64,000 nt of DNA. Origin: Octopus bimaculoides (Eukaryota). Every line of letters begins with the position of its first letter. Positions within the stretch are counted from its first letter, which is position 1. The notes below the pieces were generated by a model. That model searched no databases. It had not been told where the DNA came from and saw nothing but the letters and a program-made list of their open reading frames with translations. The DNA is taken from positions 4,616,997 through 4,680,996 of the forward strand of contig NC_068994.1 in NCBI RefSeq assembly GCF_001194135.2. The letters run 5' to 3'. Made by a program: the position numbers and the translations under genes. This document shows, in pieces, positions 55,432-58,206 of this stretch.

Positions 55432-58206
55432 ATGGAGCGGTCTGCCAGTGTACCGTTCCATTACGACATGTACGGGATGCCATTTCACCCGGCACATACC
55501 CTACATGCTCCGAGGATGACTCACATTGCCGACAAGTCCATTCACAACACACTCTCTTCGGCTGGGAAACACTTTCCTCACAGCAGTGACCATGGCCTCG
55601 ACACTCAGCGAATGATTCCTATGCAAGATAAAGGCAATCACTGCAGTATTTCCGGCAAACACCTCCACCATCGACACTCTTCGTCGTCGTCGTCATCACA
55701 TTCCCACAGTTCTCAGAGAATGTCCCATGCAACAGAAAAATCTATGCACCATTCAAGCAGCTCAGGCAAGCAGTTCCCACATGACCACACCCTTGATTCA
55801 CAAAGAATGCTACATGGTATTGAAAAGTCCAGCCAAAATAGCAGCAGCAGCTCTGGCAAGCATTATTCTCATGAACATAACATGCAGTCAAGCCAAAGAA
55901 TCTCACACGAGAAAACAACCCATTCTTCATCAATTTCTGGGAAGCAATTCCTGCAAAGTAGCTGCCAAGAAGTTCCAAGGATGTCACATGTCCCAGAGAA
56001 AAATATTCACAACAGCATCTCTAGTAAACAGATCTCTTCCCACAGACATAACTTGGAGAAGGAGAGAATAGCATCACCAGTTGACAAACCAGACAACAAC
56101 AGCAACAGTGACCTGTCTGGGAGCCAGTTCTCCCATGAGTCAACTATAGAGAGCCAGAGACTGCCACTGCCCTATATTGGTCAGACAGTGTTTCCTGGTA
56201 ACAATATGTACAGCAGCCAGTATTCTCAGCCGTGTTACTTACCGACGACTGACAGAATGCAGTCAAGCTTGGAGAGCGGACAATCATCTAAGGAGAGTTC
56301 TTCTCAAAAGAGCTCCACTGCTAGTATTGATAAATCATTCCATGGTGATGTGTCTCAAAAACAATATGGCCCGAACAAACTCTCGCAGAGCTCCGTAAAA
56401 CAACATCAACATCAACCACATCAACAGCAGCAACAGCAACCACAACAACAGCAACAACAACAACAGCAGCAACCACAACAGCAACAACATCCTCAATCCC
56501 TCAAACAGCTCTTCTGCGATTACTGCGGCAAGAAGTTTGCTCAGGAATATTTGATGCACATGCACCGAAGGAAACATACTGGAGAGAAACCGTTCCAGTG
56601 CGACATCTGCAACAAACAGTTCTCTCGCAAAGATGTAATGCAGCGACACAAAAAGAATCACACGGATAAAATTGATCAACCAATGAAAAGCAATGAAAAC
56701 CATTATCAGTCGATGCCAGTCAACGTTCAAAGAAATGAAATTCAGAATCATGGAAAATTCCAACATCAGAATATTTCTCCAAGTTACCAAAGAGCACCAA
56801 CTAATACACAGAAATATCCATCACAATCTCAGCCCATCTCACAACCTCAGTATCAGATGCAAAAAAACATGGGGAGCAATTATCAAGGAATGCCGCCAGA
56901 TATTCCCAGGTTTGAAGAACTACATAACGTCTCTATGAAAAAATCTTATTACTGTGACATATGTCAGAAACAGTTTGCTCAGCGCTATTATTTGGCCATT
57001 CATAAACGGTCTCACACTGGCGAGAAACCATTCCAGTGTGATTTCTGCATTCAGAAATTTGCCCGCAAAGATACCTTGAAGATCCACCGTAGAACACACA
57101 CAGGCGAGACACCTTATCAATGCAATGTTTGTCTTGAAAAATTCTCTCAAAGAATTAAGTTGCAAATTCATCAGAAACAGCACATTAGTAAGAAACGGTA
57201 CCAATGTGATATTTGTCTGAGACATTTCGCACAGCGTTACTACCTGCGAATACATCGCAGGACTCATACAGGGGAACAGCCTAATCAGTGTGAAGTCTGT
57301 CTAAAACAATTTGTACAGAAATACCACCTGGAGATCCACAAGAGGATTCATACTGGGGAGAAACTGTTCCAATGTGATGTCTGTCTGAAACAGTTCACTC
57401 AAAAATACTACCTGGCCATTCATAAGAGAACCCACACGGGAGAGAAACCATTCCAGTGTGACTTCTGTATCCAGAAATTTGCTCGCAAAACAACCCTTCA
57501 AATACACAGGAGAACCCATACAGGAGAAAAGCCCTTTAAATGTGAAGTTTGCCTCAAGCAATTTTCCCAAAGTAGCAAACTAAGAGTTCATCAAAGGACC
57601 CACGGACCGAAACGACGCTACCAATGTGATGTTTGTATGAAACTGTTTGCACAGCGACATTATCTTCAGATTCACCAGAGATCTCACACCGGAGAGAAAC
57701 CGTTCCAATGTGAGATTTGTTTCAAACAGTTTGCTCAGAGAAACACATTACAGATACACAAGAGAACACACACAGGAGAGAAACCATTCCAGTGTGAAGT
57801 CTGCCTCAAGAACTTTGCCCACAAACACTACCTGCAATTGCATAAAAGAACCCACACTGGGGAGAAACCGTTTCAGTGTGACTTCTGCTTCAAGCAATTT
57901 GCACAGAGGAATTCTTTGCAGATGCACCGCAGAACTCATACAGGTGAGAAACCCTTTCAGTGTGAAGTGTGTTTGAAGGCATTCGCTCAGAGACACTACC
58001 TACGACTGCACAAACGAACCCATACAGGTGAGAAGGCCTTCCACTGTGACTTGTGCCCTAAACACTTTGCTAGGAGCGACACACTACATCGCCACAAGAA
58101 GACCCACAACAAGACTGCCAGTAAACCTCCAAAGACTTCTTCGAATTCCATCAACAAAACGGTTGAAGAATTTCCTCCTATGAGTACTTATTTGTGGCAA
58201 CTGTGA
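55432..58206 (+). CDS. ZNF-B: single-coding-exon C2H2 zinc-finger protein, about 924 aa, 2+14 fingers, short polyQ, Ser/His-rich N-terminus
   Basis: Uninterrupted ORF. The track starts at TTG 55423, but the in-frame ATG at 55432 has a good Kozak context (ccaaaATGg). Fingers lie at 56515-56661 (2) and 56953-58107 (14 on an exact 84-nt register, mostly TGEKP linkers). PolyQ at about 56398-56490. Confidence 0.96.
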   Translation: MERSASVPFHYDMYGMPFHPAHTLHAPRMTHIADKSIHNTLSSAGKHFPHSSDHGLDTQRMIPMQDKGNHCSISGKHLHHRHSSSSSSSHSHSSQRMSHATEKSMHHSSSSGKQFPHDHTLDSQRMLHGIEKSSQNSSSSSGKHYSHEHNMQSSQRISHEKTTHSSSISGKQFLQSSCQEVPRMSHVPEKNIHNSISSKQISSHRHNLEKERIASPVDKPDNNSNSDLSGSQFSHESTIESQRLPLPYIGQTVFPGNNMYSSQYSQPCYLPTTDRMQSSLESGQSSKESSSQKSSTASIDKSFHGDVSQKQYGPNKLSQSSVKQHQHQPHQQQQQQPQQQQQQQQQQPQQQQHPQSLKQLFCDYCGKKFAQEYLMHMHRRKHTGEKPFQCDICNKQFSRKDVMQRHKKNHTDKIDQPMKSNENHYQSMPVNVQRNEIQNHGKFQHQNISPSYQRAPTNTQKYPSQSQPISQPQYQMQKNMGSNYQGMPPDIPRFEELHNVSMKKSYYCDICQKQFAQRYYLAIHKRSHTGEKPFQCDFCIQKFARKDTLKIHRRTHTGETPYQCNVCLEKFSQRIKLQIHQKQHISKKRYQCDICLRHFAQRYYLRIHRRTHTGEQPNQCEVCLKQFVQKYHLEIHKRIHTGEKLFQCDVCLKQFTQKYYLAIHKRTHTGEKPFQCDFCIQKFARKTTLQIHRRTHTGEKPFKCEVCLKQFSQSSKLRVHQRTHGPKRRYQCDVCMKLFAQRHYLQIHQRSHTGEKPFQCEICFKQFAQRNTLQIHKRTHTGEKPFQCEVCLKNFAHKHYLQLHKRTHTGEKPFQCDFCFKQFAQRNSLQMHRRTHTGEKPFQCEVCLKAFAQRHYLRLHKRTHTGEKAFHCDLCPKHFARSDTLHRHKKTHNKTASKPPKTSSNSINKTVEEFPPMSTYLWQL

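What the first reader, a model, noticed from the sequence alone, without database searches (positions are those of the whole stretch)
55483..56382. Ghost zinc fingers: the ZNF-B N-terminus is a cysteine-free decayed C2H2 array kept in frame
Seen: the Ser/His-rich N-terminal ~300 aa contains seven 27-36-aa repeats of the form (Q)RMxH-xxEKS-xHxSxS-GKxF-xHxHxL, e.g. SQRMSHATEKSMHHSSSSGKQFPHDHTLDSQRMLHGIEKSSQNSSSSSGKHY. This maps onto the C2H2 unit HQRxH-TGEKP-FxCxxC-GKxF-xxxxxL. A further unit at 56326-56382, IDKSFHGDVSQKQY, matches GEKPFHCDVCQKQF, with both Cys codons one substitution away (GGT and TCT from TGT). SDLSGSQF at 56107 uses AGT and TCT at the two Cys positions. HCSISGKH at 55639 keeps one Cys, with TCC at the second. 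In five of the seven repeats the pre-Gly residue is TCT/TCC. Inference: at least 8 ancestral fingers lost their zinc ligands but stayed in frame, becoming a His/Ser-rich repeat domain. It could act as a disordered, interaction or His-based metal-binding module, i.e. a new effector domain built from dead fingers in a family that lacks a KRAB-type effector. A Pfam-type search would probably miss it.
Basis: partly seen in the sequence, partly recalled or inferred. Interest (0 to 1): 0.8.

Follow-up and report, generated by a model that had tools for sequence, protein, structure and literature searches.

The report
Dead zinc fingers kept as repeats
The first ~325 residues of an octopus 16-finger zinc-finger protein are a Ser/His-rich repeat region that descends from zinc-finger units without their zinc ligands and is still conserved as protein; this is an extreme case of the known "degenerate finger" phenomenon, and its function is untested.

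Summary
The window is Octopus bimaculoides chromosome CM046614.1. The 924-aa ORF at 55432-58206 (+) has 16 intact C2H2 fingers. Its N-terminus holds seven 27-36-aa repeats (aa 27-241) with strong self-similarity (z about 14).

The zinc-finger origin is supported. A plain Smith-Waterman alignment lays aa 8-243 unit by unit on real fingers F9-F16. It scores 106. Nulls average 38-39, with a maximum of 84, and 0 of 2000 reach 106, even when finger columns are permuted with periodicity kept. hhalign gives P=0.001 in the same register. Two control segments do not. Pfam sees nothing.

Identical residues between units use the same codon no more often than chance (37% against 40%). The units are therefore old and held by selection on the protein. 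The frame has no stop in 360 codons.

"Eight independent finger deaths" is not favoured. The seven core units share about nine derived residues, which points to amplification or homogenisation of an already dead unit. The effector and metal-binding ideas remain untested, and AlphaFold2 predicts disorder. No cephalopod orthologues could be reached with these tools.

The parts
55432..58206 (+). Whole coding sequence of the zinc-finger gene ('ZNF-B'): 924 aa in a single ORF. ATG at 55432 in a good Kozak context (AAAATGG), with in-frame stops just upstream.
55444..55509 (+). Ghost finger U0 (aa 5-26, running on into PRMTH of U1). ASVPFHYDMYGMPFHPAHTLHA has Tyr (TAC) at both Cys columns and keeps P10, F11, D14, F20 and L26 of the finger.
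   Evidence: Ungapped match to the finger profile: at most 1 of 3000 shuffles reach it. Smith-Waterman p=0.001. 16 of 18 nt identical to PFQCDI of real finger 2. Beta-hairpin in the AlphaFold2 model, with 10-residue-block mean pLDDT of 57 and 74.
55510..56154 (+). Seven core ghost units, U1-U7 (aa 27-241). Consensus: QRMsH-xxEKs-xHnSSxS-GKqF-xHxHxLxS. Boundaries: 55510, 55606, 55714, 55801, 55894, 55975, 56065.
   Evidence: each unit scores 41-52 bits against the repeat HMM; z=7.0 against the real array
56155..56307 (+). Ser/Gln/Pro-rich spacer (aa 242-292) with no detectable finger signal. It may hold one or two units decayed beyond recognition (QRLPLP..., DRMQSS...).
   Evidence: not above the nulls
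56308..56406 (+). Ghost finger U10 (aa 293-325). Core DKSFHGDVSQKQY at 56329-56367, with Gly (GGT) and Ser (TCT) at the Cys columns.
   Evidence: The 13-mer scores 36-40 against real fingers, reached by 0-1 of 2000 shuffles. 26 of 39 nt identical to finger 8, the best window in the region. p about 0.002 and p=0.01.
56399..56489 (+). Poly-Gln tract (CAA/CAG/CAC repeat) between the ghost region and the first real finger.
56509..56661 (+). Intact C2H2 fingers F1-F2 (aa 360-410).
   Evidence: In the AlphaFold2 model F2 forms two strands and a helix (blocks at pLDDT 67-87); F1 is modelled only as a helix, aa 357-377.
56662..56946 (+). 95-aa Gln/Asn/Pro-rich linker (aa 411-505) with no finger signal. 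Served as a negative control.
56947..58107 (+). Intact contiguous array of 14 C2H2 fingers, F3-F16 (aa 506-892), with a 28-aa period.

Best explanation
The N-terminal ~325 aa of this Octopus bimaculoides poly-zinc-finger protein is a translated, intrinsically disordered, Ser/His/Gln-rich repeat region. It descends from C2H2 finger-plus-linker units that no longer carry a zinc site. Shown: the units stand in the finger register. They keep the second zinc His (col 5), the linker E-K (cols 8-9), the basic residues at cols 2 and 18, and the hydrophobic positions at cols 15, 20 and 26. They have lost both Cys (cols 13 and 16) and the first His (col 1, now Gln or Pro). Shown: the units are old and constrained at the amino-acid level. 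Inferred: one already ligand-less unit was tandemly amplified, or the units were homogenised, into the seven-unit core. U0 and U10 are more finger-like relatives at the two edges. Inferred, with low certainty: the region now works as the protein's non-DNA-reading regulatory or effector part. It would be a multivalent array of short conserved motifs (R-M-x-H, E-K-S, S-G-K-Q-F, H-x-H) that engages partner proteins, or binds nucleic acid or metal weakly through its conserved Lys, Arg and His residues. The 16 intact fingers would read DNA.
For: Origin: Smith-Waterman of aa 1-325 against the gene's own finger array scores 106 and is colinear over eight units (aa 8-243 against F9-F16). Residue shuffles give 38 +/- 6 (max 70). 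The reversed sequence gives 39. The same column permutation applied to every finger gives 39 +/- 8 (max 84). In both sets 0 of 2000 reach 106. The core alone has z=7.0, and a textbook consensus finger repeated ten times gives p=0.002. The profile-profile test with permuted columns gives p=0.001-0.0025. hhalign gives P=0.001 in the same register. HMMs in both directions place every unit in that register. U0 and U10 are each significant on their own, while aa 242-292 and the aa 411-505 linker are not. The best in-frame DNA windows all fall at the E-K...K-x-F register. Translated and constrained: no stop in 360 codons, against 5-22 in the other five frames. The probability of 325 stop-free codons is about 2e-7, and 0 of 5000 shuffles are stop-free. 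In-frame stops lie upstream of the ATG. Units differ at 42%, 38% and 68% of codon positions 1, 2 and 3, with pN/pS 0.45. Aligned identical residues use the same codon in 37% of pairs, against 40% expected at random, the same as between real fingers (45% against 46%). Synonymous sites are therefore saturated while 41% amino-acid identity persists. Amplification of a dead unit: core units are 41% identical to one another and 20% to real fingers. They share derived residues at about nine columns. Disorder: AlphaFold2 gives pLDDT below 50 for nearly all of aa 23-353, while real finger F2 in the same model forms two strands and a helix at 67-87.
Against: No orthologue or paralogue could be examined, so the ancestral state (Cys present?) and between-species dN/dS are unknown. 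There is no transcript or protein evidence for the exon or the start codon. The codon-position and pN/pS figures come from a protein-guided alignment, which biases them; the codon-identity test avoids this. Pfam models give no hit at all, even at E up to 10. With a full finger HMM the whole-sequence score is not above shuffles, because the missing Cys are heavily penalised. The function is pure inference. A single-sequence AlphaFold2 model is weak evidence for disorder and cannot see metal-dependent folding.
Confidence: 0.72

Rival explanations
1. One reading: an ancestral N-terminal array of at least 8 working fingers decayed in place, each finger losing its own ligands, and the remains became a His/Ser-rich domain.
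For: Same finger homology as above. U0 (Tyr/Tyr), U2 (Cys/Ser), U10 (Gly/Ser) and the core (Asn/Ser) carry different residues at the Cys columns. This fits more than one loss event.
Against: The seven core units share the same replacement residues at about nine columns: Q1, M3, H12, N13, S14, S16, G17, H22 and H24. They are twice as similar to each other as to any real finger. Independent decay would not repeat the same replacements unless there was strong convergent selection or gene conversion.
Confidence: 0.15
2. Chance or convergent resemblance: an unrelated low-complexity tandem repeat with a period near 29 aa that happens to look like a finger.
For: Only about 20% identity to real fingers. 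No Pfam match. The full-HMM whole-sequence score is within the shuffle range. His, Lys and Gln are common in both regions.
Against: Order-specific similarity survives nulls that keep composition, conservation and periodicity: 0 of 2000, z=8.8, and p about 0.001. Three separate segments match in one continuous register, and two control segments do not. The region lies in the same exon and frame as a real array.
Confidence: 0.05
3. The region is not functional protein: either a 5' leader with translation starting downstream, or a recently dead part of the gene whose frame is open by luck.
For: No expression or proteomic data were available here. The exact 924-aa product is not on record as a called gene in the assembly index.
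Against: The probability of 325 stop-free codons is about 2e-7. Synonymous sites between units are fully randomised while amino-acid motifs persist, which requires long-term selection on the peptide. The first ATG has a good context and is preceded by in-frame stops. No in-frame ATG lies between the last ghost unit and finger F1; the next Met after aa 276 is at aa 375, inside F1.
Confidence: 0.04
4. The units are not dead. They fold around a metal using a new all-His or mostly-His site (conserved His at cols 5, 12, 22 and 24), giving a remodelled metal-binding repeat.
For: Four His columns are conserved in 5-6 of 7 units with mixed CAC and CAT codons. The hydrophobic positions F20 and L26 are retained. 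ZNF750 shows that a finger labelled 'degenerate' can still bind zinc with altered ligands (PMC10465944).
Against: AlphaFold2 gives no fold (pLDDT below 50). Unit lengths vary by Ser-run indels exactly between the would-be ligands. His-only sites bind Zn weakly.
Confidence: 0.1

Closest known systems
Degenerate (ligand-deficient) C2H2 fingers within and at the edges of vertebrate KRAB-ZNF arrays
   Same: In-frame finger-length units next to a working array that lack one or more of the Cys or His ligands. Such units are a recognised feature of poly-ZNF evolution. [quoted passage not shown] PMC2667407 cites ZNF443, where 4 of 19 motifs are degenerate.
   Different: Here about nine units in a row lack three of the four ligands. 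Seven of them form their own conserved repeat family with shared derived residues and saturated synonymous sites. That pattern indicates a maintained, probably amplified module, not scattered decaying fingers. They make up the whole N-terminus of a gene in which Pfam found only zinc-finger-type families. No vertebrate example of this kind was found in the literature searches run here.
Intact C2H2 zinc finger (Pfam PF00096 / PF13465)
   Same: Period of about 28-29 aa. Retains the linker E-K, the K-x-F strand, the Leu of the helix, the second His, and the basic residue between the two His positions.
   Different: No Cys pair and no first His. No Pfam hit. No predicted beta-beta-alpha fold. It should not be filed as a zinc finger.
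ZNF750 'degenerate' finger that still binds zinc through CCHC
   Same: A finger whose sequence departs strongly from the CCHH consensus and is labelled degenerate (PMC10465944).
   Different: ZNF750 keeps four ligands and a stable fold. The octopus units keep at most two of the canonical four.
Zn-ribbon ribosomal proteins that lost their Cys ligands (C- forms) and other cases of domain atrophy (recalled from memory: Makarova et al. 2001; Prakash and Bateman 2015)
   Same: A metal-binding module loses its ligands, yet the polypeptide is retained under selection.
   Different: Those proteins keep their fold and their original role. Here the fold appears lost and the role is presumably new.
His-rich and Ser-rich low-complexity regions of nuclear proteins (recalled from memory)
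   Same: The composition is 23% Ser and 10% His, disorder is predicted, and the host protein is nuclear and DNA-binding.
   Different: This region is not a simple homopolymer tract. It is a position-specific 29-aa repeat with a traceable domain ancestry.

Membership tests
C2H2 zinc finger domain (PF00096 / PF13465) | Four zinc ligands in the pattern C-x2-4-C-x12-H-x3-5-H | tested here: not met
   No ghost unit has the pattern; the regex finds only the 16 real fingers. The core columns read N/C/H/S at Cys-1, S at Cys-2, Q/P at His-1 and H (5 of 7) at His-2.
C2H2 zinc finger domain (PF00096 / PF13465) | Match to the curated Pfam profile | tested here: not met
   No family at E up to 10 for aa 1-360 or for six single units. 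The real fingers score 176-317 bits.
C2H2 zinc finger domain (PF00096 / PF13465) | Beta-beta-alpha fold | tested here: not met
   The AlphaFold2 single-sequence model gives pLDDT below 50 and no secondary structure for U1-U10. U0 shows only a hairpin. Real finger F2 in the same model forms two strands and a helix. This is a weak test, since there is no alignment and no metal.
C2H2 zinc finger domain (PF00096 / PF13465) | Zinc binding | not testable with these tools
   Needs biochemistry on the isolated domain.
Degenerate (finger-derived) C2H2 units | Register-preserving sequence similarity to real fingers above composition- and periodicity-matched controls | tested here: met
   p 0.001-0.0025; P 0.001; 0 of 2000, z 8.8; core z 7.0; generic consensus p 0.002; U0 and U10 separately
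Degenerate (finger-derived) C2H2 units | Same reading frame and same exon as a bona fide finger array, with finger-like period | tested here: met
   One ORF at 55432-58206. Unit lengths are 27-36 aa (profile of 29 columns) against 28 aa for real fingers.
Degenerate (finger-derived) C2H2 units | Intact fingers at the orthologous positions in outgroup species or paralogues | not testable with these tools
   The protein databases hold neither this protein nor its neighbour ZNF-A. All homology searches came back empty. No eukaryotic genome collection is searchable by similarity here.
Transcription-factor effector / interaction domain (works-like claim, not a family) | Activation, repression or partner binding by the isolated region | not testable with these tools
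   Only indirect evidence: predicted disorder, residue-specific constraint, and Pfam reporting only zinc-finger-type families for the protein.

The most novel reading that the evidence does not exclude
The seven-unit core is a new protein module born from a single dead C2H2 finger. It would have been amplified and then conserved across octopods or coleoids for a function of its own. One candidate is a His-based, metal- or pH-switchable interaction array that stands in for the KRAB-, SCAN- or ZAD-type effector domains that cephalopod ZNF expansions are said to lack. That would be a documented route by which poly-ZNF genes make effector domains out of their own fingers.
Probability: 0.12. Interest if true: 0.7.

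Novelty: new variant of a known kind. Interest (0 to 1): 0.45.

Why it matters
Degenerate fingers are usually treated as debris at the edges of rapidly evolving poly-ZNF arrays. Here a run of about nine ligand-less fingers forms the whole N-terminus of the protein. Its core units are as saturated at synonymous sites as the working fingers, yet they keep a position-specific motif, so the dead fingers have been kept for something. If orthologues confirm this, it is a clear example of domain exaptation (folded DNA-reading module to disordered repeat). It would also give a concrete candidate for how cephalopod C2H2 expansions acquire non-DNA-binding parts; Pfam found only zinc-finger-type families in this protein. 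In practice it shows that profile libraries miss such regions. A simple self-alignment against the gene's own finger array, with a periodicity-preserving null, detects them, so the approach could be run genome-wide.

Tried and rejected
(1) Pfam hmmscan of aa 1-360 and of six single units at E up to 10 gave nothing. (2) A finger HMM built from the gene's own fingers was run against the N-terminus. It gave the right register, but the whole-sequence score was not above shuffles, because the absent Cys dominate the score. Only the best-domain score of the two-unit model beat all 1000 shuffles, and barely (4.9 against a maximum of 4.8). I replaced it with BLOSUM-based profile and Smith-Waterman tests. 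(3) Homology searches with aa 1-325, with aa 1-325 plus the aa 405-ish linker and finger 3, and with a repeat alignment, plus a full HMMER scan of 1.84 billion representatives, all came back empty. This is uninformative for cephalopods, because neither ZNF-B nor ZNF-A is in that collection. The 924-aa product is also not indexed as a called gene, although ZNF-A is, which identified the assembly. (4) The single-unit alignment was too short for the homology search. (5) DNA-level repeat finding failed on the ghost region. TRF sees only the poly-Gln tract and the real fingers, and blastn finds no other copy in the window. This fits the synonymous saturation. (6) The Ser-codon argument (TCY one step from TGY) was rejected as independent evidence. 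TCY makes up 34% of Ser codons here, the units share ancestry, and the first Cys column is mostly AAY. (7) I looked for extra ghost units in aa 242-292 and in the aa 411-505 linker and found none. (8) One script timed out and one failed on an option clash; both were rerun.
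Full report
**What and where.** The neighbouring 618-aa zinc-finger ORF (28177-30033, minus strand) is on record in assembly GCA_001194135.2, chromosome record CM046614.1. 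From my own knowledge, this accession is the Octopus bimaculoides chromosome-level assembly. The finding lies in a single long ORF, 55432-58206 (+), of 924 aa. The ATG at 55432 has a good context (AAAATGG). It is preceded in frame by stop codons and, about 120 nt upstream, by a pyrimidine tract ending in CAG that looks like a splice acceptor. Translation therefore cannot begin further upstream in this exon. The protein has 16 canonical C2H2 fingers: F1-F2 at aa 360-410 and a contiguous 14-finger array, F3-F16, at aa 506-892. Pfam reports zf-H2C2_2 at 317 bits and zf-C2H2 at 176 bits. Upstream of a poly-Gln tract (56399-56489) lies the region in question, aa 1-325. It is 23% Ser and 10% His.

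**Step 1: is the observation real?** Yes.
- Seven tandem units occupy aa 27-241 (nt 55510-56154), with lengths of 32, 36, 29, 31, 27, 30 and 30 aa.
- Their consensus is QRMsH-xxEKs-xHnSSxS-GKqF-xHxHxLxS.
- Off-diagonal self-similarity is far above residue shuffles: the best diagonal scores 97 against 46 +/- 7, and the summed top ten score 752 against 359 +/- 27.
- Two corrections apply. The first Cys column of the core is mostly Asn (AAY), which is two steps from TGY. The TCY Ser argument at the second Cys column is weak, because TCY is 34% of Ser codons here and the units are not independent.

- Curated Pfam models find nothing, even at E up to 10 and on single units.
- An HMM of the gene's own fingers gives a non-significant whole-sequence score, because the missing Cys are heavily penalised. 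It nevertheless places all seven units in one register.
- Tests that do not hinge on the Cys columns are clear. A profile-profile alignment of the 29-column repeat profile to the cyclic 28-column finger profile beats all but 2-5 of 2000 permutations of the repeat columns (z about 3.8, with or without masking Cys).
- hhalign of the two alignments gives P=0.001 over 38 columns in the same register.
- A plain Smith-Waterman alignment (BLOSUM62, gap penalties 11/1) of aa 1-325 against the real array scores 106. It runs colinearly from aa 8 to aa 243 against fingers F9-F16, unit by unit.
- The nulls for that alignment are residue shuffles at 38 +/- 6 (max 70) and the reversed sequence at 39. Arrays in which the same column permutation is applied to every finger give 39 +/- 8 (max 84). 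This last null keeps composition, conservation and periodicity. In both sets 0 of 2000 reach 106.
- The core alone gives z=7.0, and a textbook vertebrate consensus finger repeated ten times gives p=0.002. tblastn reports the same alignment at E=7e-7, without composition correction.
- The reciprocal scan of the whole protein with the ghost HMM picks up six real fingers, again in the same register.

**Two edge units add independent evidence.**
- U10 (aa 293-325) has the core DKSFHGDVSQKQY at 56329-56367. It scores 36-40 against real finger segments such as KKSYYCDICQKQF, a score reached by 0-1 of 2000 shuffles. It is 26 of 39 nt identical to finger 8, the best 39-nt window in the whole region.
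It matches the finger profile without gaps, a match reached by at most 1 of 3000 shuffles. It has TAC (Tyr) at both Cys positions, each one transition from TGC. It shares 16 of 18 nt with PFQCDI of finger F2.
- The phases of U0, U1-U7 and the finger profile are mutually consistent.
- Two internal negative controls show nothing: aa 242-292 and the aa 411-505 linker between F2 and F3.

The column table shows what was kept and what was lost.
- Kept: a basic residue at col 2 (R in 7 of 7), the second zinc His at col 5 (5 of 7), the linker E/D-K at cols 8-9 (7 of 7), a hydrophobic residue at col 15, K18 (6 of 7), Q/H19, the hydrophobic F20 position (7 of 7), and L26 or a similar residue (5 of 7).
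- Lost: C13, C16 and H1.

I conclude that the finger ancestry is well supported.

**Step 3: is it a maintained protein?**
- The frame has no stop in 360 codons, while the other five frames have 5-22. The probability of 325 stop-free codons from base composition is about 2e-7, and 0 of 5000 nucleotide shuffles are stop-free.
- Between units, codon positions 1, 2 and 3 differ at 42%, 38% and 68%. Pooled pN/pS is 0.45, against 0.29 for the real fingers. These figures are biased by the protein-guided alignment.
- I therefore added a test conditioned on amino-acid identity. Among 232 aligned identical residues, the same codon is used in 37% of pairs, against 40% expected if codons were drawn at random. 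Real fingers give 45% against 46%.
- Synonymous sites between ghost units are thus fully randomised, yet 41% amino-acid identity and position-specific His, Lys, Arg, Gly and Phe persist. This needs long-term selection on the peptide and rules out recent duplication or gene conversion.
- TRF and blastn see no DNA-level repeat in the ghost region, which is consistent with this.

The seven core units share the same replacements at about nine columns. These are Q or P at His-1, M3, H12, N13, S14, S16, G17, H22 and H24. The core units are 41% identical to one another but only 20% identical to real fingers. Repeating the same replacements independently is unlikely. The parsimonious reading is that one unit (or very few), already without C16 and H1, was amplified, or that the units were homogenised long ago. 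U0 and U10 keep more finger-like residues (P10/F11/D14 and F11/D14/V15 respectively) and carry different residues at the Cys columns. Several loss events across the whole region therefore remain plausible. Outgroups are needed to decide.

**Step 5: what does it do?** Nothing here tests function directly. An AlphaFold2 single-sequence model of aa 1-420 gives pLDDT below 50 and no secondary structure for nearly all of aa 23-353. In the same model, real finger F2 forms two strands and a helix at pLDDT 67-87, and F1 is modelled as a helix (aa 357-377). U0 shows a short hairpin, with 10-residue-block means of 57 and 74. The conserved positions are basic residues, four His columns and two hydrophobic positions.
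- My best inference is a disordered, multivalent regulatory or effector region attached to a DNA-reading array. It would act through repeated short motifs.
- Weak nucleic-acid contacts are possible. From textbook knowledge, the residues retained at cols 2, 9 and 18 are the ones that touch the phosphate backbone in real fingers.
- A remodelled His-based metal site cannot be excluded. ZNF750 shows that a 'degenerate' finger can still bind zinc (PMC10465944). However, Ser-run indels fall between the would-be ligands.

**Step 6: comparison with what is known.** Degenerate fingers lacking one or more ligands are a recognised feature of vertebrate KRAB-ZNF genes (PMC2865497; PMC2667407, which cites ZNF443 with 4 degenerate motifs out of 19). 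A 2025 survey of cephalopod C2H2 expansions contains none of the terms degenerate, effector, disordered or N-terminal (PMC12513265). This case differs in degree and in kind:
- about nine consecutive units lack three of the four ligands;
- seven of them form their own conserved family;
- together they form the whole N-terminus.

The region fails the defining tests for a zinc finger (ligands, Pfam profile, predicted fold) and should not be annotated as one. It passes the tests available for 'finger-derived degenerate unit'. I rate it a new variant of a known kind.

**Limits.** The protein collections searched hold neither this protein nor its neighbour. The four empty homology searches therefore say nothing about cephalopod orthologues. 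No eukaryotic genome collection can be searched by similarity with these tools. The outgroup test, between-species dN/dS and expression evidence remain to be done.

Noticed in passing
window 28177-30033 (-): A second zinc-finger gene ('ZNF-A'), 618 aa. It has 8 dispersed C2H2 fingers by regex, separated by long non-finger spacers, and a ~150-aa C-terminal Gln/Leu/Glu repeat (QQQQLQEQQ...). It is indexed as a called gene in GCA_001194135.2 (CM046614.1), which identified the source assembly. The N-terminus of ZNF-B aligns to it only weakly (24 of 1000 shuffles reach the score).
   Followed up: partly
window 56947-58107 (+): The real 14-finger array contains an internal block duplication. F3-F7 parallel F8-F12: for example F4 and F9 are both FQCDFCIQKFARK.TL.IHRRTH, and F5 and F10 are both followed by atypical basic linkers (HISKKR and HGPKRR). 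TRF also reports periods of 84 and 168 nt over F12-F16.
   Followed up: no
window 56399-56489 (+): A poly-Gln tract with interspersed His and Pro (CAA/CAG/CAC, TRF periods 6, 9 and 15) separates the ghost region from finger F1. ZNF-A also carries long Gln-rich tracts.
   Followed up: no
window 56662-56946 (+): A 95-aa Gln/Asn/Pro-rich linker splits the fingers into groups of 2 and 14. It shows no finger-derived signal, although it contains a ghost-like snippet (HGKFQHQNISPSYQR).
   Followed up: partly
window 8372-8827 (+): A short ORF (151 aa) next to a TA-rich microsatellite carries two C2H2-like motifs (FECSVCQKICKSNRGLKRHFKIH and ICSLCGCLSRTLSGLKSHIRRH). It may be a fragment of another ZNF gene or of a mobile element.
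   Followed up: no
window 55444-55509 (+): In the AlphaFold2 model, the N-terminal ghost unit U0 is the only ghost unit with some predicted structure: a beta-hairpin at aa 10-18, with 10-residue-block mean pLDDT of 57 and 74. It lies where the finger hairpin would be.
   Followed up: partly
whole window: There are 16 runs of N (10-647 bases, 3278 in total) and many TA/CA-type microsatellites, so parts of the window are assembly gaps. None lies inside the ZNF-B coding sequence; the nearest are at 53200-53577 and 58362-58371.
   Followed up: yes
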